A DNA stretch of 64,000 nt from Salpingoeca rosetta. Lineage: Eukaryota > Protista > Choanoflagellata. Under the pieces are notes generated by a model, which was not told where the DNA came from, did no database searches, and worked only from the letters and a program-made list of their open reading frames with translations. The position numbers and the translations under genes were made by a program. Below are positions 14,913 to 27,802 of the stretch, one piece after another. The first letter of the stretch is position 1; every line of letters begins with the position of its first letter. The stretch is from contig JAWQFM010000003.1 of the NCBI GenBank assembly GCA_033442325.1, positions 93,873 through 157,872 of the forward strand, written 5' to 3'.

Positions 14913-17717
14913 ATGCGGAGGGGACGACAAGCAGCAACAGCAGCGCCGCAGCCGCTGTGGCGTGCGTTGGAGCGCATGGCCTGTGGCAACAGCTTTTACA
15001 AGGCAGCGTACGAAAGGGCGCAGAGGCACGTGCAGCCCGTTGTTGTACACGCCGAGAAGGTTGCAGCGCACCAGCACAATCAGCAGAAACAACACCAGTC
15101 ACGAACAGCTGCCACACCACCATCCATTGCACAAGGTCCAATGGCCAGCAACAGGAATCGCAGCGCCCACCACAACAACCACAACACACACCACAACACA
15201 CACCACAACACACACAACAACCTCAACACCCACAGCGCCGGTGCATTTAATGCGCAGGTCACGTCAGACACACATGCGGCGCAGGTCACGTCAGACACAC
15301 ATGCGGCGCAACGCACACAAATCACACACACTGCACACAATACACACACCAAACACAACACACATACCAAACACAACGCTCACAATACACGACCGCACCA
15401 GACCAGAAAGGGGGCGCCGTCGGCTTCATCATCGCCATCACCCGTGTGTGCCACTTCAGCGGCCACGCCAGCACGGAGGGCGCTGTCTCCAATTGCACTG
15501 CTGGCGCGGATTGTATCCTCGGCCAAGTCGCTGGCGGCTTGCCCCGTGGATGTTAGTGTGTCCCACTCAGACAAAGGAGCCTCGCCCCTCATGCTGACAT
15601 CCATGCCGTTGCCGGTGGGGTCTCAGTGCAACAGTGACTACCCACTGCAAGACCACCACCATCATCGCCTTTATCCGCAACACCAGGCACCAACCATACA
15701 ACAGCACCAACACAACCATGCCACGAACAAGCAGCGGCTGTCCCAGGGTACCTTCTTCAACACACATGCAGACGACGCGTTATCCCGCTCACACCTCAGC
15801 AGCACCAAGGGTGCAGGCACAATCGGGCACAGCAATAGCAGCGCCCCTGGCGCTGAAACGCCATTCTCAGCCGCAGCCCGACTGGCACTCTTGCAAGACG
15901 TGGAGACGACATCAGCTCAACACGAGGATGATACCAGTACTTCACAGCAGAACCGCCGGCACCGCAATGCCAAGCAGCGATGGCAGCACCAGCATCAGCA
16001 GCACCAACAGGGGTTTCGGTGCACGTCCCGGGCAGAGATGCAGCAGCATGCTGAAGCGGCGCTCAGGCTGTTTGCGGTTACGGAGACACCTGCAGCCGTG
16101 GCAAGCACGCTGCAGGCCATGGAGACAGCAGGCATCGCGCTGGACGAGGAGCACGTGCACCAGCTTGTGCGGTGTTACGCGTTTGCAGGCGACACAGAGC
16201 GCGTGCATGCCACGCTGCGTGTGCTCGCGGCAGGGCACCACAGCCCCTCCCCTGCCCTGTGGACAACTGTCATGTCGGCGTACGAGCCGCCAATCACAAA
16301 CGAGAAGCTCATCGCGCTCGGGCAGACACTTGATCTTTTCCTGTTCCCCGAAGCACAATCAGCATCCCTAGCCGCGGGCGACGAAGGCATCCCCTACAGC
16401 AGCCCACGCGGCAGCAGTGGCAGTGGTGCGTTGGTTGGCAGCATCGATGACATTGGTGTGCTGCGCGACCAGGTGGATCCCGCGCACCTGGTGGGTGTGT
16501 ACATGTCCGCGCTCTCTGCCAGCCGGCAGCTGCAGCAGCCGCTGCTGTCGCGGTACATCCTCAAGCATGCGCACGCGCGGCTGCCGTCTGCCCCGCCCGT
16601 CGAGCTGTGGGACCAGGTGGTGTGGTGCTATGCGCTGTGCAAGGAGCTGTCTGCGGCGCGGGCCCTCCTGCAGACGATGCGGCAGGCCGGCGTGGAGCCA
16701 ACCATGGACACGCACGCGTTTGTGATGATGGCGCACGGGCGCGCGTACGAGGCAGATATGGCACTGGCCATGTTCGACTCGCTGCAGCGGCAGCACACGC
16801 GGCTGTCGCTGTCTGTGTACCTGTGCATCATGGACGCCCTGGCACAGACGGCGCAGCCGCAAGAGGCACGGGCCGTGTTCGACACCATGGTGCGCAGCGG
16901 CATCGCGCCCACCACCACCGCATACAACAAGCTCGTCAAGGCCTATGCGCACAGCCGCAGCCCCGAGCTTGCCGCGCGTGTGGTGGACACGATGAGGGGG
17001 GATGGCCTCCTGCCCAACGAGACGACGTACCGGTGTTGGATGTACGGGTACGCCCGCACACGCGACCCGGCCGGCGCCGAGGCGCTGCTGCACGAGATGC
17101 AGCTGCACGGCATGCAGCCGTGTGCGCAGACGTTCAACATCCTTGTGTACTGCTACGCAATGGCCGGGGAGGTGGGCACTGCCCGGGCTGTCATCGACCG
17201 CATGATCGAGTGCGGGGAGAGGCCGCTCACCGTCTCGTTCAACGTGCTCGCAAACGCATACGGGCGCCAGCACAACCTCGATGCCCTGCGCGCGCTGGTG
17301 ACGGACATGGCTGAGGCGAATGTGGCGCCCAACTTGGTGACCTACAACACGCTCATCAAGTCGTTCTGCATGAACCACCAGGTTGACAAGGCGGAGGCGA
17401 CGGTTGGCCGCATGATTGAGTCCGGGCTCGCCGGCGACCTGTCCACCTGGGGCGCCCTTGCAGGCGCGTATGCACGCAAGGGCCACATCGACAGCCTCCT
17501 CCTCACATTTCGCCGGTGCATCGCAGGCGGCTGCTTGCCAAATAAGCAGATGTTCGACATGGTGGTGTTCCTCCTGTCGCGCGCGTCTGTGCCCGAGGCC
17601 GAGCGGTTGCACACCATCACGACTATTGCACACATGATTGTTGATGCGGCGCAGGACGACCCAGACGCAAACCGCGCCCTCATCCAACACTGCTTGCACA
17701 GCGTCACGGCGTCGTAG
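14913..17717 (+). CDS. P-type pentatricopeptide repeat protein (intronless, 934 aa)
   Basis: Tandem 35-aa PPRs in the C-terminal half (PTTTAYNKLVKAYA, PNETTYRCWMYGYA, PCAQTFNILVYCYA, PNLVTYNTLIKSFC). Low-complexity N-terminal third. Confidence 0.9.
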   Translation: MRRGRQAATAAPQPLWRALERMACGNSFYKAAYERAQRHVQPVVVHAEKVAAHQHNQQKQHQSRTAATPPSIAQGPMASNRNRSAHHNNHNTHHNTHHNTHNNLNTHSAGAFNAQVTSDTHAAQVTSDTHAAQRTQITHTAHNTHTKHNTHTKHNAHNTRPHQTRKGAPSASSSPSPVCATSAATPARRALSPIALLARIVSSAKSLAACPVDVSVSHSDKGASPLMLTSMPLPVGSQCNSDYPLQDHHHHRLYPQHQAPTIQQHQHNHATNKQRLSQGTFFNTHADDALSRSHLSSTKGAGTIGHSNSSAPGAETPFSAAARLALLQDVETTSAQHEDDTSTSQQNRRHRNAKQRWQHQHQQHQQGFRCTSRAEMQQHAEAALRLFAVTETPAAVASTLQAMETAGIALDEEHVHQLVRCYAFAGDTERVHATLRVLAAGHHSPSPALWTTVMSAYEPPITNEKLIALGQTLDLFLFPEAQSASLAAGDEGIPYSSPRGSSGSGALVGSIDDIGVLRDQVDPAHLVGVYMSALSASRQLQQPLLSRYILKHAHARLPSAPPVELWDQVVWCYALCKELSAARALLQTMRQAGVEPTMDTHAFVMMAHGRAYEADMALAMFDSLQRQHTRLSLSVYLCIMDALAQTAQPQEARAVFDTMVRSGIAPTTTAYNKLVKAYAHSRSPELAARVVDTMRGDGLLPNETTYRCWMYGYARTRDPAGAEALLHEMQLHGMQPCAQTFNILVYCYAMAGEVGTARAVIDRMIECGERPLTVSFNVLANAYGRQHNLDALRALVTDMAEANVAPNLVTYNTLIKSFCMNHQVDKAEATVGRMIESGLAGDLSTWGALAGAYARKGHIDSLLLTFRRCIAGGCLPNKQMFDMVVFLLSRASVPEAERLHTITTIAHMIVDAAQDDPDANRALIQHCLHSVTAS

Positions 17718-18218: not shown

Positions 18219-18290
18219 CTCCCCCACGGGGAATCGAACCCCGACCCCGACGGTGAGAGCGTCGTATCCTAGCCATTAGACCATGGGGGA
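18219..18290 (-). tRNA. tRNA-Glu (CTC)
   Basis: TCCCCCA/TGGGGGA acceptor stem, D arm TGGTCTAATGGCTAGGA, anticodon stem CGACG-CTCTCAC-CGTCG, GGTTCGATTCC T arm; T-rich sequence downstream. Confidence 0.97.
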
Positions 18291-19334
18291 TCTTGTAATC
18301 ACTCGGTAATTTTTACTTATATTTAGTTAATTGCTAGACGTCATGGACTTCATGGAAGACGGACAATGAAGGACTGACTGACCATATGTGGTGTGTGAAT
18401 TAATTTGATGTGACAATCAAACAATACAGGAGTCTTGAGTATCAGTCACAAGGTTCCACGTTGGTCATATGAAGCAGCACATGACCGTATTTCTTTAATG
18501 CCATCAATTTTAGACCTTTGCGCGGCCGCAACCAGGCAACCCCGTGACACGCCTCGTGCTCATGTCAACACCACCATCTTAAAGCACACGCCTTTGCACA
18601 CAACCCCGCAACTTACCTCGATCGACCTTGAGGGTATTGCTGCCATGAGTGGTTACGTCGATACCCAAAACAACCAGACACTGCAGCACGTGAACTGCCA
18701 CGGCTTGGGCTCGTGTTTGTGTGCTGACCGTTTGGCAGAAGCCACAAACTGTCCGTCTCTCTGTGAACCCGACGCTTGTCCCCCTCATTAAGGTTGCGCG
18801 AGGGCGCGTGTGTGATCATGCATGCATGTGTGTGTGTGTGTGCGACCGTGTATGTGCGCTCAATTACGTTCCCTTCAATGCTTTGTGGCATGGGCCTTAT
18901 TGTCCTCTCTGTCTCTCACTGTTCTGCCTCTCTCTCTCTCTTACGTGCATGCATCCCGTTCCCAACACCAGCCCAAATACACACCAACGTTACATGGAGA
19001 AGAGACGTATGTTCACCCGGTTGCTTCCGACAATTTATTCGCTGCACAGGCGAGGGGCACCGCCATCACCCACGCACACCAACACATTCAAAGGAGAAGC
19101 AAACGAACACAAACAGACACAACGCCACCTGCCCCCCCCCCAAAACAACACACGGCCCTCACACAAAATAAAGAAGAAAGAGGCCCCCAAGAGGACAGCA
19201 CAAACGCCAATCATTAAGCAAGAGAAGAGGATGAAGGGAAAGTCAACAAACACAACCGAGCACAAATCGCACCCAAGTAGAGCCATGCCACCACCAACCC
19301 CGGAGCAAGAGCACACTGGTCAGTAGTGGCCGCA

Positions 19335-20840
19335 TCACGGGGACAGAAGCTGCACGGGAAACACACGTCCACTCCTCGCACTCCACAGCAAGAAGGCCAG
19401 CCTCGACAGAGCATCAAGCCCGCTGACGGCATCCGCAGCCACGGCGGCATAGTCCATCGTGGCAAGGGCACGTGCACTGTAGTCCCTGCGCCCAGTCTCA
19501 TAGGCAGGCGTGTCAGAGACGCGTGCAGCTGCGCTGCTGCTGCCGTTGCCGTCGGGGCTATCGAGGGTGAGCTCGAAAGCAGCCGTTGGCACCGTGGCGC
19601 TGGACATGGCATAGTCTGTCGTGGCAAGGGCACGTGCACTGTAGTCCCTGCGCCCAGTCCCATAGGCAGGTGTGACAGAGACGCGTGCAGCTGCGCTGCT
19701 GCTGCCGTTGCCGTCGGGGCTATCGAGGGTGAGCTCGAAAGCAGCCGTTGGCACCGTGGCGCTGGACATGGCATAGTCTGTCGTGGCAAGGGCAAGTGCA
19801 CTGTAGTCCCTGCGCCCAGTCTCATAGGCAGGTGTGACAGAGACGCGTGCAGCTGCGCTGCTGCTGCCGTTGCCGTCGGGGCTATCGAGGGTGAGCTCGA
19901 AAGCAGCCGTTGGCACCGTGGCGCTGGACATGGCATAGTCTGTCGTGGCAAGGGCACGTGCACTGTAGTCCCTGCGCCCAGTCTCATAGGCAGGTGTGAC
20001 TGCGCTGCTGCTGCCGTTGCCGTCGGGGCTGTCGAGGGTGACGGGGCTGCTGGCGGGGGCGGGGAGCTCGTAAGCGGCCGTTGGGGATGTGGGGGCGGAC
20101 GTTGCCAGGTCTGGCTCCTCATCCTCTTTCCCGCCAGGCAGCTGTGCCAGGTGCCGCTGCGTGGCCGCAATCATGGCCTCTTGTTCCTCCTCACACCAAG
20201 CAAAGCGGAACCGGTCAAACAAGTCCATGGGGTCGTCGCCGCATTCCCACATGTGCGGGTAGATGTCCTCAAAGTGCGAGTCGGACAGTTGCTCTCCGCG
20301 CGAATAGGCGCGGGCGCGCATGCGGGCGACGATAATGTTGCGGCACGGGACGCAGAACAGCTTACACGGCGATGTGAGAAAGTAGACGTTGCCCACATCA
20401 CCACGGCACATGTAGCACACTTCGTTGCCCGGCACACGCCTAGTGCCCTTCAGCATCTTGTCTGCGCAGACGGCCCGGTGCTCCTCCAGGTCCTGCGTCA
20501 CCACGCGCAGCATGGCCGCACACAGGGCAGCGTCACGCGGCAGGCGCTCCGGCTCCCGCGACAGAATACAGCGCGCAAGGTGGCGGCGCGGAAGCACGTA
20601 GAAGCGCAAACGCCGGTAGTCAGCACGAAGCATCACCTCATACTGCAGCGCACACAATGGCGCAAGCCTCCACGACCAACGTACGCACTGGCCAAGCACC
20701 TATCGACATCAACACAAGGGAGGGCAGAAGCACAGAGACGTGGTCAGCGGTTGAATCGGTGTGAGTACACACCCAGCAGCACACACGCACCAGAAGGTGT
20801 GTGTGTATGTCATACATCTGTCGCCAGCGCTTCAGACCGC

Positions 20841-20912
<72 letters not shown>

Positions 20913-21911
20913 GCGACACCACCAGCCAGCCAACAAACAACGGCAAATGCTCACCCGAACCCAGTGGAGAGCGCCCGGGTTGATAAGGACAGCTTCGCCC
21001 GGCCCTTGGATGAACCGCACCAGCGGAATGTTCTCCTTGTCGAGCTCGTCAGGAGTCGGCCACCACCACGCTTCCTTGAAGTCGATACCATTCTTCTTGC
21101 AGAGCGACTCAACGCGGCCCACGTGCTCGAGAGCAATGCCGTACCACACGCACGACCCCGGCCCGACGTTGATGTGGACTTGCATCAGGCGGTCGCGGTC
21201 CTGGTGTGCAGGCGTCGCCCATCCTGCCTCCTCCAGGCGGATAGATTGACTGTTCACGCCGCGAACGACATCAAGCCCGGCGAGCATGGTGCCGCCTCCG
21301 CGCCAGTGCAGCTCGTCGGGGAGGGTGACTCTTAGCTCCTGCAGCTGCTCTTCGGACACGTTCTGGCTCAGACATGCGCTGGGGGAAAACGCCGCACACC
21401 CCCGGGTCTCGAGCATCCCCAGGGCTCGGACCGCGGCATCCGCCTCCGCATGTACGGCGCGCACGACGTCCTCGCTTGCTTGGTAGGCGCGGGGTGGGGT
21501 GACACGTGCTCGAAGGACGGAGATGGCACCGGCACTTGAGCTGGAACCACGGCTGCTGTCGACAGCTGGTATTGGCAACGACCATTTTGCTCGCTTGGGC
21601 TGGTGCTCGTCTTGTGTCGTGTGCGTTGGGTCGGTGGGAGCAGCCATCTGCAGGTAGGCGGGCAAGAGCACTGTCTTGCTGCTGCCGTTGTTCCTCTCTG
21701 CCTTGAGCCTCCAGCCGCTGCAGCTGGTCTGCACTTGGGTGCTCAGCGGTGTCGAGGGGCGGGCGTCCGGCAGCGGGTACTTGAAGGTGAAGCCCGGGCA
21801 GCGGAGAAAAGGTGGGCTATCGACTGTTGGAGTGGGCAGAACACCCGGCCCAACGCCGTGGGTCGTCAGATACGCATCCTTCCACACCACTGACGATGCA
21901 GTCCGAGGCAT
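19335..21911 (-). CDS. KDM6 (UTX/JMJD3)-like JmjC protein with C-terminal Zn finger and repeat tail; 2 exons (21911-20955, 20699-19335)
   Basis: TPAHQD...VHINVGPGSCVWY...LCKKNGIDF..WWWP...ENIPLVRFIQGPGEAVLINPGALHWVR|VLGQC follows the UTX JmjC pattern (TPGHQE...NINIGPGDCEWF...WWP...[28 protein letters not shown]). It is followed by a CYMC...CVPC Zn finger. Confidence 0.85.
19448..20085. repeat. 162-bp coding tandem repeat, about 4 copies (54-aa unit)
   Basis: Units start at 19448, 19610, 19772 and 19934. The first three are near-identical; the fourth is diverged with a deletion. Confidence 0.95.
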
Positions 21912-22237
21912 GGCGCAGGATAGCGCGCAGGAGAGGAAAGAGGGGAGAGAGAAGGGATGGATGAAGGAGAGTGGACGAGAGAGGAGAGAAGAAAGGTGGG
22001 TAATGGCCACCACCAGAAACGGAGAAGACGAGGCGTGCTTGGGAAGCACAGGCACCTCAAGTGCACAGGGAGGATAGCACAGATGCGCTCAAGGGACTGA
22101 CTTGATATCAGAGGTCCAGATGAAAATGAACCGAGAGGATGGCGCTGAGCCATGCATACATGCACCTATGGAAAAAAGGAGGAAGGAACGAAGAAGTGCA
22201 CAGCGAACCAAGCAAATGCTGCGGAAGAGGAATAAAC

Positions 22238-22303
<66 letters not shown>

Positions 22304-22548
22304 GGTGGTTGTGCTCGGCTGAAATTTGAATTTCGTTGCCAACGCAAGAAAAGTGGGAAAGGTGCCGAGGACGCACGCAACGCACACAACGCACAGAGCC
22401 GCCGATGCACAACGGGCATGGTGGATATGCGCCCGTGGCCTCAGACGGAAAAACTGCCAACACTGGTGCGAAAAGCAGCCATCCCCAAAGCAAGGGGCGC
22501 AGCGCACAGGCCGCAGTGCAACAAGGGTGTCCGTGTCCGTGTCCGTGT

Positions 22549-22590
<42 letters not shown>

Positions 22591-23659
22591 GGGCGCGTGA
22601 TGGCACGTAAGAGCGTGCTGGGTGGATGACGAGAGGAAGACAGTACGAGAGTGAGGGCATGAAAGGACCGTGAAGATGAAGATGAAGAGGAAGAGGAAGG
22701 AGGAAGGGGGAGGTAGTTGAGAAAAGGCGAGGCAGGCGGGTAAGAGTTGTGGTAACTGCCACAGGGACCCGCCAAGATGGAAACTGGCTGTCACCTTCAA
22801 TGCACAGGAGCGCGCGCTCATGCACATGTGCACACGCAAGAGACAGTGCTTAGAATAGGGCGCGCGAGACAAGAGGAGAGATGGAGACTGAGAAGCACTG
22901 GCACCAGCAGCAGCAAGGGAAGCGCTGGCAACAGCAGCAGCAGCGGCAGTAGCAAAAGCGCGCCAACAGTGGTGCAACAAGTGCAACAACAACAAGCGCG
23001 CAAGCACCAGAGAGACAAAGGGAAGAGCTGGCTGCCCGTGTGCCAACAGCAAAGAAACAACACACTGGCCAAGAAATGGGCAGTGCAGCCGGCGACCCAG
23101 CCAACCCAACCAAAAGCAAGCCACGCAGGCAAGCACAAAGACCCCGCTTTGCCCCCGCGATAGAGGGAGGGAAGAAGGAGAGGAAGTTGGTGGTCGCGGG
23201 TTTGGCGCCAACGTTCCCTCAGCCAAGCACCATCAGTCCTTCATCACGAAATGTGACGGGCACATGGCAGGGGGGGGGGGAGAGAGTGTGTGTGAGTGTA
23301 CGTGTGCGTGTGAGTGTGAATGTGTGTGAGAGAGAGGATGAGAGGTGAGCGCACAAAGAGCACCTCCACTGAAGAGAGGGAAGGAAGACGGGAAGAGGAT
23401 ATGGGGGTGGGGGTGGGAGAGGTGTGATGGGAATGGAGAGGAAGAGGAAGAGAGAGGAAGGGGGAAAGGAAAGAAGCAAGAGCAACGTGTGCCACTGCCG
23501 CAACGGAACCACGCGCGTGAATGAAAAACAAACCCATCTGACACGATGATGACATCAGCAAACACGTTTGTTGGTCCCCAACCACCCAAACACACCAACA
23601 ACAAAATAGCACAGGAGGAAGACGAAAGGAAGCAGAAAGGCAGTAGAAATGCAGTAGAA

Positions 23660-23772
23660 AAGAAGAAGAAAGGAAGAAGAAAGGAAGAAGAAAGGAAGAA
23701 GAAAGGAAGAAGAAAGGAAGAAGAAAGGAAGAAGAAAGGAAGAAGAAAGGAAGAAGAAAGGAAGAAGAAGAA
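23660..23772. repeat. 11-bp polypurine minisatellite (AAAGGAAGAAG)n
   Basis: About 10 consecutive copies read directly from the sequence. Confidence 0.85.
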
Positions 23773-24444
23773 AGGCGTGGGTAAAACAAACACAGACACA
23801 CAGACACACATACACACACACACACAGACAACAACAACAACAACAACAGCACGACAGCGATCAATGTGTCTCACCTGCTGCTGTTGTTGCGAGGAAACGA
23901 TGACGAATTTCGGAAGCAGCGTGGTTGGGACGTGGGTCCACTCATGTCACACCCATTTCTTGATATCCGTGTGACGGCTGATGCGAAGAAGCGCTCCGCC
24001 ATGCTTATATGTGTCCACTGCTCAACTTGATCGGGTGAAGGCGTGTGCCTGTGTTGTGTGGGAGCCGGTGTGGAAGAGAGGTGGGCTTTGCACACTCTTG
24101 CAGCAAGCAGCATGAACGCTTCACAGCATCACCCAGCGGTTATTGCTGCAGTTGCTGGTATGGCTACTGCTGTCATCCTCTCTTGCTCATGCTGTTCCGT
24201 CATCATCATTCCATTCCAATGACGCTTGAGGCGAGCAGAACGCTCGCGTGTCACTGTCACGCGGCAGTGGCTACGTGCCTGCTTCGTTTGTTTGGGTGCA
24301 TCGTGTCAGCAGCACAAGCAGTGGCGCGCCAAAACCAGGAAAGGCAATTTTGACCTTTTTCACAAAGGCAATTTTGACTGAAGCTTCCTTGCTTGTGTTG
24401 GTGAACTATTTTGAAATCTCCAAAAATTCTCAGGTCTCCGAAGA

Positions 24445-24516
24445 TCCCCCATGGTCTAATGGCTAGGATACGACGCTCTCACCGTCGGGGTCGGGGTTCG
24501 ATTCCCCGTGGGGGAG
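24445..24516 (+). tRNA. tRNA-Glu (CTC), identical to the copy at 18219-18290
   Basis: Same 72-nt sequence and cloverleaf. Followed by TTTTCTTTTT, a Pol III terminator-like run. Confidence 0.97.
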
Positions 24517-24991
24517 AAGTGTTTTCTTTTTGTCCCTGAACGACCCAAACGGCGTGCTCTGTTGTGCTGCGTTGAGCCCGTTCCTCACTTGCCATTGTGG
24601 TTTGTGGTTTGTTTGCTCGAACGCTTGACCTGACGCGCTTGACGTGGTGGATGGATGTCTTGGGCTGTATTGATGCAACACTAAAAGAACGGGAAAGGAC
24701 AGAAGCTATGCCCAACAGTGCAACCAACGCTGCTAACACTGCTGCGAGAGAAACCAGAAACATGACTCCGGTGACCAAGGAGATCGGGGAGGCAGGAAGT
24801 GGAGGGAAAGAATCAACCTCGCGTATTGTGTACGGCAGAGGAGACAACGAGCAGCGAAAAGAAAGAACAGTCAGTCACCGCCGAGCGAGGGAAAGGGCCG
24901 TGAGATAGGAAATGAATGATAACAGCAGGCGCTGGGGAGGGGAGAGAGCTGCAAGGCTACACACGCACACGCACACACACACGCAGCTTGG

Positions 24992-25215
24992 TTACTCCAT
25001 GCCCATCCTGTCGGTGAGCCAGAGCGCAAACTCATAGCCGACGAAGCAGGCCGCGTTGGCCGGGAACGCGCGCGCCATGACAGCGCTGAAGCCGCGGAAC
25101 AGAGCACCCACGCCTGTGCACGGTACGCGGGGGCGGCCAGGGGAGGTGAGTGAGGAGGGGGGGGGGCGTGGAAAGGAAAGGCGGAGAAGAGAAAGGCAGA
25201 ATCATGGGTGAGCGA

Positions 25216-25256
<41 letters not shown>

Positions 25257-25298
25257 AACGTGAACGCACATAGATAAGATTCACACCTCCCTCCACCA

Positions 25299-25341
<43 letters not shown>

Positions 25342-26203
25342 AACAAACACCCCCCCCCCTTTCAAGTACACCTGCACCCACACACGTGCGGCCCTACCGT
25401 CAGTCTTGATGATGTCTGCGAGCACGGGGAGGTAACCAGAGTAACGGCCGTTGGGGGCAACCTGCAACACGCACACAGGCAACGTATGGGGCGCAGCCAA
25501 GGGTGAAATCGAGCAAGGCAACACACAGCGAGTTAGAGCACAATGGCCAGGGAAACACAAAACAGACCACACAGACCCACTCATCACTGCCCCCATTCCC
25601 TTGCCCACGCACAAGCTCGCTCGCTCCACACAGACCTGGAAGCGTGTCTTGACAGTGTCGATAGGGAGGCAGACGGCCCAGTTGCCCATGCCGGCCAGAC
25701 CGCCAGCAAGCAGCAGGCCAGGCACGCTCGGTCCACGCTGGTGTTCGAAATCGACACACGAAGAAGACGCAAGGTTAAGAAGAAACAACAAGAAGCAACA
25801 GGCGTGCCACGCCAGGTGAGCGACGTATGACGTGACACACGGCACGGCACAGGTCTGGAACGAAGCAGTCCGGCAGGATCACGGTGGAAGAACGTACAGG
25901 CATTCAAAACAACAACACTCAAGAACAACAACCAAACACGCACAGACAGACACAGACACAGACACACACCCAGACACACACACACGCACGCACAGATACA
26001 CGCAGACACACCTCGCCTTCGGCGGTGAAGGCCAGCTTCAAGACTTCGTAGCCGGAAAAGTAGACAGCAGAACCAACACTGTAAACCAGGGCGTGCGTTG
26101 ATGGTGTCACCCATGAGAGCACGCCGGCAAATACTGTCGGCGCAATTGCGCACAGCCACACACATACAGCCACAGCCACAGCCACAGCCACACAGACAGC
26201 CAC

Positions 26204-26269
<66 letters not shown>

Positions 26270-27613
26270 ACACATGACTCACGCATCGCGGGCAAATGTG
26301 GCGATGAGGCCACGGTTGACGTTGCGCAGGCCGCCCTCCTTGTAGAGCTGCTTGAAGGCGTCCATGGTGCCGTTGTACTTGGGCTTCTCCGCAGCGTTCT
26401 GTCACGAGGGAAGGGACGACGAGTGGGAGTTGGTGTGTGCGGGGAAGAAGGGAATGCAGTGAGGCAGCAGCCGCGCAACGGAGGGTGGAGGAAACAGAAA
26501 CGACAGACGCGCAGAGGGGCACGCAGGCATGGGGCAACGTATGTACACACACTGTCTCTCTCATTCAGATGCACACACCCATACACACACACACCCATAC
26601 ACACACACACACAGGACAGACACAGACACAAACACACACAAACACATTCATACATACAAACACACACAAACACATTCATACATACAAACACACAAATATG
26701 TACACACACCTGAGTTTGGAGGAGGCACTTGACACGCTCGCCAGGGGCCATGATCGGGGTGGTGAAGAGGGCGGAGGTTGCGCCGGCAAGGGCGAGCTGG
26801 CCAAGCTTCCTGTTCTCAATGGCATCTTCGTCGCAGAACAGCTTCTTGCCGTAGCTGTCGGTACACCAAAGTGCATGAGAGCAGGGTGAAACAACAGCGA
26901 CACCGGCGGCAAGAGGGATGGACAGACAGCGACACGAGCGGGCCGGATGATGCACGCAGGGTCAAATGCAACCACACAATCACATTCCAACACATGCAAA
27001 CCCACAATCACACACTCACACACTCCAACACATCCACTCACACGCACGCGCACATACACGCACACAAACACCACAGGTATCCATACCTGTAGCCGAGGAA
27101 GCACAGGGCGAACATTGGAGCAACGCCAGCCAGAGGCGCAGCAACTCCCTTGTAGAGTCCAAAGAACCCCTCCTACATGCCAAAACACACGCGAACACAA
27201 CATAACTGCCGTTGTGAGATGTCGTGCACGGCAGACACACACACACATACACAGAGACACAGTCACAAGCACGAGCGAAGCATAGTGCCTCCAACACGCA
27301 ACTGTTCTTCTGGCCTCATACCTTGGTCACGGTCTGCCGGGCGCAATCGAACAGGCCAGAGTATTGGGGTGGCTTCCCGGGCACATGGGTCATGTTCTGC
27401 AACCGAACCTGGTTTGCGCACATTCGTTCGTGCGTGTTGTATGTGTGTGTTGTGTGTTGTGTGTTGTGTTGTGTGTGTGCATGAGTGTATGTGTTTGTGT
27501 GCGTGTGTGCACACACACGTTCAGTTGCAAACATGAAAAGCCAACTCACATCCATCGCATACAGAACACACACACACATACACACACACACACACAGGCA
27601 CATAGGCACACAC

Positions 27614-27660
<47 letters not shown>

Positions 27661-27802
27661 CCCTCTTCTCCAACTCCTTTGTGCACACCTTGATCGTGTC
27701 GAGAGGATGACCAACAATCACAAGGGCCACGCCACCAACGCCGCCAGCAATGAAGGAGCGCAGCGCTCCAGGCTGCTTGCTCATGCCTTTGTCTTCAGCC
27801 AT
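24992..27802 (-). CDS. SLC25A20: Mitochondrial carnitine/acylcarnitine carrier (multi-exon)
   Basis: [56 protein letters not shown] and [14 protein letters not shown]: three carrier signature motifs with CACT-type residues. Confidence 0.92.

What the first reader, a model, noticed from the sequence alone, without database searches (positions are those of the whole stretch)
18219..24516. tRNA-bracketed island carrying a KDM6-like H3K27 demethylase gene
Seen: two identical tRNA-Glu(CTC) genes point outward and form a 76-bp inverted repeat (tRNA plus 5' AAGA) around ~6.15 kb. The only recognisable gene inside is a divergent, one-intron UTX/JMJD3-like JmjC gene with a young repeat tail. The island interrupts an otherwise compact run of housekeeping gene pairs. 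Established: tRNA genes act as chromatin barriers and as targets for retroelements (Ty1/Ty3, Dictyostelium TRE); KDM6 erases H3K27me3; H3K27me3 has been reported on transposons in choanoflagellates. Inference: this is either a tDNA-insulated chromatin-regulator locus or a duplicated/mobile cassette carrying an anti-silencing enzyme, potentially invertible via the tRNA repeats. No transposase, RT, TIR or LTR is visible.
Basis: partly seen in the sequence, partly recalled or inferred. Interest (0 to 1): 0.8.

Follow-up and report, generated by a model that had tools for sequence, protein, structure and literature searches.

The report
tRNA pair around young KDM6 paralog
Two identical tRNA-Glu genes in the choanoflagellate Salpingoeca rosetta flank the most diverged of three recently duplicated KDM6-like genes, but such inverted tRNA pairs are routine in this genome and nothing marks the interval as a mobile element.

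Summary
Two identical tRNA-Glu(CTC) genes (18219-18290 minus, 24445-24516 plus) point outward around 6,154 bp. The only recognisable gene inside is a one-intron KDM6-like JmjC gene with a young 162-bp coding repeat. It is Salpingoeca rosetta PTSG_02170.

- Inverted or direct same-anticodon tRNA pairs 0.2-14 kb apart are the norm here: 30 of 59 scored tRNA genes have a neighbour within 15 kb. Other first-reader notes of this scan report similar tRNA pairs elsewhere in this genome.
- The gene is neither single-copy nor the canonical copy. A ~4.2-kb unit (coding sequence plus 2.4 kb of conserved upstream DNA) occurs three times. The other two copies lie on another contig, with no tRNA found in the 30 kb scanned around each.
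- The unit ends 52 bp from the right tRNA. The tRNAs are not part of it.
- No transposon features were found.
- The window copy is the most diverged. It keeps an H-x-D...H metal triad but has lost two conserved 2-oxoglutarate contacts (Lys to Glu, Asn to His).

Chromatin insulation and inversion could not be tested.

Verdict: ordinary genome architecture around a lineage-specific KDM6 paralog. Interest is low to moderate.

The parts
18219..18290 (-). tRNA-Glu(CTC), left copy, transcribed leftwards
   Evidence: ARAGORN; Rfam RF00005 at 57.7 bits; identical to the right copy.
24445..24516 (+). tRNA-Glu(CTC), right copy, transcribed rightwards
   Evidence: ARAGORN; Rfam RF00005 at 57.7 bits. One of 4 identical copies in the genome.
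18291..19334 (-). Unique sequence between the left tRNA and the stop codon (presumed 3' UTR)
   Evidence: No other copy in the genome apart from microsatellite hits. Not shared with the paralogs.
19335..20699 (-). Exon 2 of PTSG_02170: end of the JmjC domain, helical and four-Cys zinc domain, repeat tail, stop codon
   Evidence: ORF and splice acceptor; identical to NCBI protein P0001; C414, C417, C435 and C438 are invariant in alignment A4.
19446..20000 (-). 162-nt tandem repeat, 3.4 copies at 97% identity, coding 54-aa units in the C-terminal tail
   Evidence: Tandem Repeats Finder; repeat families D5 and D8. Absent from both paralogs.
20700..20954 (-). The single intron (GT..AG, 255 nt, contains a (CA)n run)
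   Evidence: Sequence reading. The junction HWVR|VLGQ matches the NCBI model. The intron is kept in both paralogs.
20955..21911 (-). Exon 1 coding sequence: about 185 aa of unmatched N-terminus, then the JmjC core with H236, D238 and H316
   Evidence: Pfam JmjC E=4e-15; PDB KDM6B, UTY and KDM6A E about 1e-25; residues 1-181 have pLDDT below 50 and no KDM6 similarity.
21912..24393 (-). Conserved upstream region (presumed 5' UTR and promoter) shared by all three paralogs.
   Evidence: blastn against both paralog loci. P0-P1 JC distance is 0.21, against a coding dS of 0.39; indels are not in threes. Only three copies in the genome.
20148..24393 (-). Extent of the roughly 4.2-kb segmentally duplicated unit as seen from the window copy
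   Evidence: blastn end points against C8:1.553 Mb and C8:1.464 Mb. The P1-P2 homology ends within about 50-130 bp of the same upstream point.
24321..24378 (.). Promoter-proximal conserved motifs at the end of the unit: GTGGCGCGCCAAA (E2F-like) and two AAAGGCAATTTTGAC copies
   Evidence: Three-way alignment A3; sequence; exact motif positions.

Best explanation
The interval is one ordinary Pol II transcription unit lying between two locally duplicated tRNA-Glu(CTC) genes. Shown: the genome is Salpingoeca rosetta and the gene is PTSG_02170. It is the most diverged of three KDM6-family paralogs made by DNA-level duplication of a roughly 4.2-kb unit (coding sequence with its intron, plus 2.4 kb of conserved upstream DNA). 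The tRNAs are outside that unit, and inverted same-anticodon tRNA pairs are common in this genome. Inferred: the Glu pair is an old local inverted duplication of which only the selected 72-nt tRNA is still recognisable. Younger pairs in the same genome still have arms of 0.1 to more than 1 kb. Also inferred: the window copy evolves under relaxed constraint and no longer binds 2-oxoglutarate in the canonical way, so it is a modified or inactive demethylase homolog. The paralog at C8:1.553 Mb keeps the canonical residues and is the likeliest working H3K27 demethylase.
For: Identity of the genome and gene. Three loci only, whether searched with the window protein or with an animal KDM6 fragment (41%, 39% and 35% identity, window copy lowest). 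Extent of the unit and absence of tRNAs from the scanned paralog loci. Upstream and 3' DNA are not repeated elsewhere. The intron is retained in all copies, so the duplication was DNA-mediated. Divergence: dS 0.39 and dN/dS 0.55 for P0-P1; upstream JC distance 0.21. tRNA base rate: 30 of 59 scored tRNA genes have a neighbour within 15 kb, giving 21 pairs against 0.93 expected, 12 inverted and 9 direct. Nine same-amino-acid inverted pairs were verified, eight of them with the same anticodon. Arm lengths run from at least 1 kb at 100% identity (Trp) through about 0.8 kb (Ser) to 116 nt (Ile). Pocket changes: K227E, N246H, Y225R and E238D, where K, N and E are found in 22 of 22 KDM6 relatives and Y in 20 of 22. 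The Lys, Thr and Asn contacts are taken from the UTY structure paper PMC4140284.
Against: No expression or chromatin data could be read, so the transcription start, the UTR status of the upstream region and any boundary function are unverified. All three copies share nearly the same upstream end, and in the window this end lies 52 bp from a tRNA. Random segmental duplication does not predict that. The tRNA list is partial (63 of 498 candidates scored), so the base rate is a sample.
Confidence: 0.7

Rival explanations
1. Recurrent breakpoint at a tRNA gene. The tRNA gene, or the fork stalling and fragility it causes, set the upstream end of the duplicated KDM6 unit. That would explain why independent copies share one end, and why that end abuts a tRNA in the window.
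For: Homology of all three copies stops within about 20-130 bp of window position 24393, which is 52 bp from the tRNA 5' end. tRNA genes are reported at rearrangement breakpoints in yeasts (abstract of PMC2817429). Other tRNA pairs here bracket genes of expanded families: TIR/COR, COR-A, NPHP3-like TPR and AAA.
Against: Neither paralog has a tRNA or a tRNA remnant at its boundary in the DNA scanned. The direction of copying is unresolved. The window copy's unrelated C-terminal tail hints that it is the derived copy, not the source. The shared end could simply be the limit of an older homology that bounds later gene conversion between P1 and P2.
Confidence: 0.12
2. tRNA-gene insulation. The two tRNA genes bind TFIIIC and act as barriers that isolate the KDM6-like gene's chromatin from the flanking housekeeping genes.
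For: Both tRNA genes are intact, score well and have T-run terminators. Barrier activity of tRNA genes is established in yeast and mammals (my own knowledge). H3K27me3 domains exist in S. rosetta (PMC12572184).
Against: No chromatin data could be examined. The same bracket occurs around unrelated genes, so nothing ties it to this gene. The paralogs manage without tRNAs in the DNA scanned. The H3K27me3 paper does not mention insulators, boundaries or demethylases.
Confidence: 0.1
3. Mobile or invertible cassette. The interval is a transposable or recombination-switchable element whose ends are the 76-bp inverted tRNA repeat.
For: A perfect 76-nt inverted repeat. The inner gene unit exists in three places.
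Against: The repeated unit excludes the tRNAs and the 3' 1.9 kb. There are only 3 copies, and no transposase, reverse transcriptase, long terminal repeat or terminal inverted repeat was found. About 20 DNA or RNA runs from 8 studies hold the stretch, but none could be laid to look for the other orientation.
Confidence: 0.04

Closest known systems
KDM6 family (UTX/KDM6A, UTY, JMJD3/KDM6B) H3K27me2/3 demethylases
   Same: Best sequence, profile and fold matches. JmjC core with an H-x-acid...H triad, the two pocket cysteines, a helical linker and a four-Cys zinc domain.
   Different: Only 31-35% identical to animal KDM6. No TPR repeats. No recognisable N-terminal half of the catalytic fragment. 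2-oxoglutarate contacts changed: Lys to Glu and Asn to His. A lineage-specific 54-aa repeat tail.
Local tRNA gene duplications and clusters in eukaryotic genomes
   Same: Identical same-anticodon genes a few kb apart in either orientation, with flanks that decay while the tRNA stays identical.
   Different: Nothing distinguishes the Glu pair from the others. Its arms have decayed down to the tRNA plus 4 nt.
tRNA-gene chromatin barriers (for example the yeast HMR tRNA-Thr gene) and tRNA-targeted retroelements (Ty1/Ty3, Dictyostelium TRE)
   Same: tRNA genes sit at the edges of a gene unit.
   Different: No retroelement sequence lies next to either tRNA. Barrier function was not tested.
Young segmental gene duplicates with gene conversion
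   Same: Three copies. P1 and P2 are 96-98% identical over a bounded 4.1-kb tract, while their middles and tails differ.
   Different: The window copy is older (dS 0.39) and lies on another contig.

Membership tests
KDM6 (JmjC H3K27 demethylase) | JmjC fold with the Fe(II) triad H-x-E...H | tested here: met
   H236, D238 and H316. Asp replaces the Glu found in 22 of 22 relatives. Pfam JmjC E=4e-15.
KDM6 (JmjC H3K27 demethylase) | Conserved 2-oxoglutarate contacts (UTY Lys1084, Thr1090, Asn1103) | tested here: not met
   The window copy has E227, T233 and H246, so two of three are replaced. K and N are invariant in 22 of 22 relatives. Paralog P1 keeps them. P2 has lost the first metal-binding His.
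KDM6 (JmjC H3K27 demethylase) | C-terminal helical domain plus four-Cys zinc domain | tested here: met
   C414, C417, C435 and C438 are invariant in A4. The fold search aligns about 316-330 columns to the UTY, KDM6B and UTX catalytic fragments. The model was built on a KDM6 alignment, so this is not fully independent.
KDM6 (JmjC H3K27 demethylase) | N-terminal half of the catalytic fragment; TPR repeats in UTX and UTY | tested here: inconclusive
   No similarity in residues 1-185. pLDDT is below 50 there. No TPR match in Pfam.
KDM6 (JmjC H3K27 demethylase) | H3K27me3 demethylase activity | not testable with these tools
   Needs an enzyme assay.
Transposable element or mobile cassette | Transposase, reverse transcriptase or integrase; terminal repeats; target-site duplication; many copies | tested here: not met
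   No such Pfam hits on the interior ORFs. Three copies only. No terminal repeats other than the tRNAs, which lie outside the repeated unit.
Segmental duplication | A block of at least 1 kb, present elsewhere, with introns and non-coding DNA retained | tested here: met
   Window 20148-24393 matches C8:1.553 Mb and C8:1.464 Mb, intron included.
tRNA-gene insulator | TFIIIC-bound tRNA gene with a chromatin-state transition across it | not testable with these tools
   Both tRNA genes are intact. No ChIP reads could be laid.

The most novel reading that the evidence does not exclude
tRNA genes in S. rosetta are hot spots where segmental (often inverted) duplications begin or end. This would repeatedly yield 'tRNA-bracketed' young genes (KDM6-like here; Roco/TIR-COR, NPHP3-like and AAA genes elsewhere). 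It would also explain why independent copies of the KDM6 unit share one end that abuts a tRNA gene in the window.
Probability: 0.15. Interest if true: 0.6.

Novelty: new member of a known kind. Interest (0 to 1): 0.3.

Why it matters
H3K27me3 was recently mapped in S. rosetta (PMC12572184), but in my term search that paper never mentions a demethylase. This work shows that the species' whole KDM6 repertoire is three young, fast-evolving paralogs. One keeps canonical residues (C8:1.553 Mb). One has lost a metal-binding His (PTSG_03365). The window copy has a changed 2-oxoglutarate pocket. That tells experimenters which gene to knock out first, and it warns against calling PTSG_02170 an H3K27 eraser. 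The tRNA bracket itself is a routine feature of this genome and should not be read as a special insulated or mobile island.

Tried and rejected
- **Read laying.** No read evidence exists. I sent those places to no search tool afterwards and worked beside them (up to 23654 and from 23776).
- **First structure model.** The single-sequence AlphaFold model was useless (pLDDT 32).
- **Word-based protein search.** It found only the two S. rosetta models, so the whole-library search was used.
- **Exon 2 against PDB.** Exon 2 alone has no PDB sequence hit.
- **Papers.** No paper mentions PTSG_02170 or PTSG_03365. The H3K27me3 paper has no supplements held here and no mention of demethylases, insulators or boundaries.
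- **Upstream ORFs.** I tested whether the upstream 261-aa ORF, including the NCBI 128-aa model, is a real co-duplicated gene. I rejected this. Only a DNA-conserved core translates alike, the frames shift between copies, and only 10 of 28 indels are multiples of three.
- **RNA-mediated duplication.** Rejected because the intron and the promoter-side DNA are retained.
- **Other RNA genes.** Rfam found nothing in the interval except the tRNAs.
- **Direction of duplication.** It could not be resolved. There is only a weak hint that the window tail is the derived one.
- **Synteny.** An empty-site test in relatives was not attempted, because no close relative's genome is reachable with these tools.
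Full report
**Observation.** ARAGORN finds exactly two tRNA genes in the 64-kb window. Both are tRNA-Glu(CTC), at 18219-18290 (-) and 24445-24516 (+), and Rfam confirms both at 57.7 bits. They are identical over 72 nt plus AAGA on the 5' side. The longest inverted repeat in the region is this pair, and the flanks are otherwise unrelated. The interval between them is 6,154 bp.

On the minus strand lies a JmjC gene. Its exon 1 coding sequence runs 21911-20955, a GT..AG intron of 255 nt with a (CA)n run occupies 20954-20700, and exon 2 runs 20699-19335. My splice reproduces the NCBI protein PTSG_02170 of Salpingoeca rosetta (773 aa, record GL832959.1) exactly. The C-terminal tail holds a 162-nt in-frame repeat, 3.4 copies at 97% identity.

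**Is the tRNA bracket special?** The genome has only four identical tRNA-Glu(CTC) copies. Two are here and two are on contig C8, 42 kb apart. Random placement would not put two of them 6 kb apart.

A partial Rfam tRNA scan of the whole assembly scored 63 of 498 candidates and listed 59 genes. Thirty of these have another listed tRNA within 15 kb. That gives 21 pairs against 0.93 expected, 12 of them inverted and 9 direct. I fetched nine inverted pairs and checked them:
- Lys-CTT, twice
- Thr-CGT
- Trp-CCA
- Ser-AGA
- Ile-AAT
- Gln-CTG
- Ala-TGC/CGC
- Arg-ACG

Their spacing is 0.3-12 kb, and they occur in both outward and inward orientation. Arm lengths form a series. The Trp pair has at least 1 kb at 100% identity, the Ser pair about 0.8 kb, and the Ile pair 116 nt. 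The Lys, Gln, Ala and Glu pairs keep little more than the tRNA.

The genes between those pairs are unrelated to chromatin. They include TIR plus COR (Roco-like), COR-A, NPHP3-like TPR and AAA genes. Other first-reader notes of this scan report tRNA-Ala genes bracketing a Roco gene and an inverted tRNA+FBXO4 duplication in the same genome. I did not check those notes.

An AAAATT/AATTTT box lies 18-30 nt upstream of 11 of the 21 tRNA genes examined, against 0.9% of random 45-mers. It is present upstream of both window copies and absent upstream of the two C8 copies, so among the Glu genes it cannot be told from a remnant of their common origin. The bracket is thus the genome's normal way of carrying tRNA genes.

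**The gene is one of three young paralogs.** A six-frame search of the assembly with the JmjC part finds three loci: the window, C8:1553367-1554242 (P1, 68% aa identity) and C8:1463938-1464375 (P2 = PTSG_03365). An animal KDM6 catalytic fragment finds the same three loci and nothing else. P1 scores best (41%), then P2 (39%), and the window copy worst (35%).

blastn shows homology from window 20148 to 24393 with P2, and to 24235 with P1. This covers most of the coding sequence, the intron and 2.4 kb upstream. It does not cover the repeat tail, the 1,044-bp 3' flank or either tRNA. P1-P2 homology ends within about 50-130 bp of the same upstream point. The upstream and 3' sequences have no further copies in the genome beyond microsatellite hits.

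ARAGORN found no tRNA in the 30 kb scanned around each paralog, which reaches 14-15 kb on either side. A looser Rfam scan of the central 10-kb loci, L005 and L007, also found none. Because the intron and the promoter-side DNA are retained, the duplication was DNA-mediated.

Divergence figures are as follows. For P0-P1, dS is 0.39 and dN/dS is 0.55. For P1-P2, dS is 0.06 in the core, yet their middle parts and tails are unrelated, which suggests gene conversion or a mosaic origin. The upstream 1.7 kb that I could examine has a JC distance of 0.21 for P0-P1 and 0.021 for P1-P2. This is lower than the synonymous divergence, and the indels are not in threes. The region is therefore conserved non-coding DNA, presumably 5' UTR and promoter. 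The long ORFs there, including the NCBI 128-aa model, do not behave as coding sequence.

The unit ends just after an invariant GTGGCGCGCCAAA (E2F-like) and two AAAGGCAATTTTGAC copies. That point is 52 bp from the right tRNA.

**What the protein is.** Three lines of evidence place it in the KDM6 family:
- The PDB sequence search hits only KDM6B, UTY and KDM6A (E about 1e-25).
- The whole-library search gives next relatives at 31-40% identity. Of the ten top hits looked up, four are named KDM6A, UTY or KDM6B of animals, three carry only generic names, and three are unnamed.
- An alignment-based AlphaFold model (residues 182-513, pLDDT about 60-90) has KDM6 structures as its top 29 fold matches.

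The four zinc cysteines and the two pocket cysteines are present. Residues 1-181 match nothing, and there are no TPR repeats.

In the active site the window copy has H236, D238 and H316. It also has E227, where 22 of 22 relatives have Lys, and H246, where 22 of 22 have Asn, together with Y225R, N239R, S244Q and N326R. In UTY the equivalent Lys1084, Thr1090 and Asn1103 hydrogen-bond the 2-oxoglutarate mimic (PMC4140284). P1 keeps these residues, and P2 has Arg in place of the first metal-binding His. The window gene is therefore KDM6-like by descent and fold, but it probably does not work as a canonical 2-oxoglutarate-dependent H3K27 demethylase.

**Mechanism and rivals.**
- Most likely (0.7): an old local inverted tRNA duplication happens to flank one transcription unit, which is a lineage-specific, relaxed KDM6 paralog.
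- Next (0.12): the unexplained point is that all copies share one upstream end, which in the window abuts a tRNA gene. A role for tRNA genes as duplication breakpoints would explain it. The paralogs carry no tRNA remnant, however, and the direction of copying is unresolved.
- Insulation (0.10): cannot be judged without chromatin data.
- Mobile or invertible cassette (0.04): the evidence is against it.

**Limits.** No expression, transcription-start, inversion or ChIP evidence could be obtained. I sent those places to no search tool afterwards. Nothing in the window was taken for human. No close relative's genome was reachable for a synteny test.

**Verdict.** The sequence description was accurate, but the arrangement is ordinary genome architecture. 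The useful result is the three-member, fast-evolving KDM6 repertoire of S. rosetta and the altered cofactor pocket of the copy in this window.

Noticed in passing
window 18291-18335 and 24400-24444; loci L011, L012, L017-L020: An AAAATT/AATTTT box lies 18-30 nt upstream of 11 of the 21 S. rosetta tRNA genes examined, against 0.9% of random 45-mers. It looks like a Pol III upstream (TATA-like) element.
   Followed up: partly
window 24321-24378: An invariant GTGGCGCGCCAAA (E2F-like site) and a doubled AAAGGCAATTTTGAC motif sit at the upstream end of all three KDM6 paralog units. This hints at shared, possibly cell-cycle-linked, promoter control.
   Followed up: partly
L015 (G000:C26:196000-202500): The tRNA-Trp(CCA) pair sits inside inverted arms of at least 1 kb at 100% identity, around a 4.2-kb spacer with a COR-A (Roco-like) ORF. 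This is a very recent inverted duplication, or possibly an assembly artefact.
   Followed up: partly
L005 and L007 (G000:C8:1549000-1558999 and 1459500-1469499): Paralogs P1 and P2 are 96-98% identical over a bounded 4.1-kb tract, but their middle coding parts and C-terminal tails are unrelated. P2 (PTSG_03365) has Arg in place of the first metal-binding His. This looks like gene conversion or a mosaic origin.
   Followed up: partly
window 23594-23802: An 11-nt GAAGAAGAAAGG-type tandem array was seen in the first repeat scan.
   Followed up: no
window 20842-20910, 22240-22299, 22527-22591, 25215-25345: Long (CA)n and (GT)n microsatellites occur in the intron, in the upstream region and in the introns of the neighbouring carrier gene. 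They account for most of the other repeat pairs reported in the region.
   Followed up: no
window 14913-17717 and 24871-27802: The flanking genes are an intronless PPR protein (next to PRORP) and a multi-intron mitochondrial carrier, followed by PP2C. The left tRNA sits between two convergent 3' ends. The right tRNA sits between the carrier's 3' end and the KDM6-like upstream region.
   Followed up: partly
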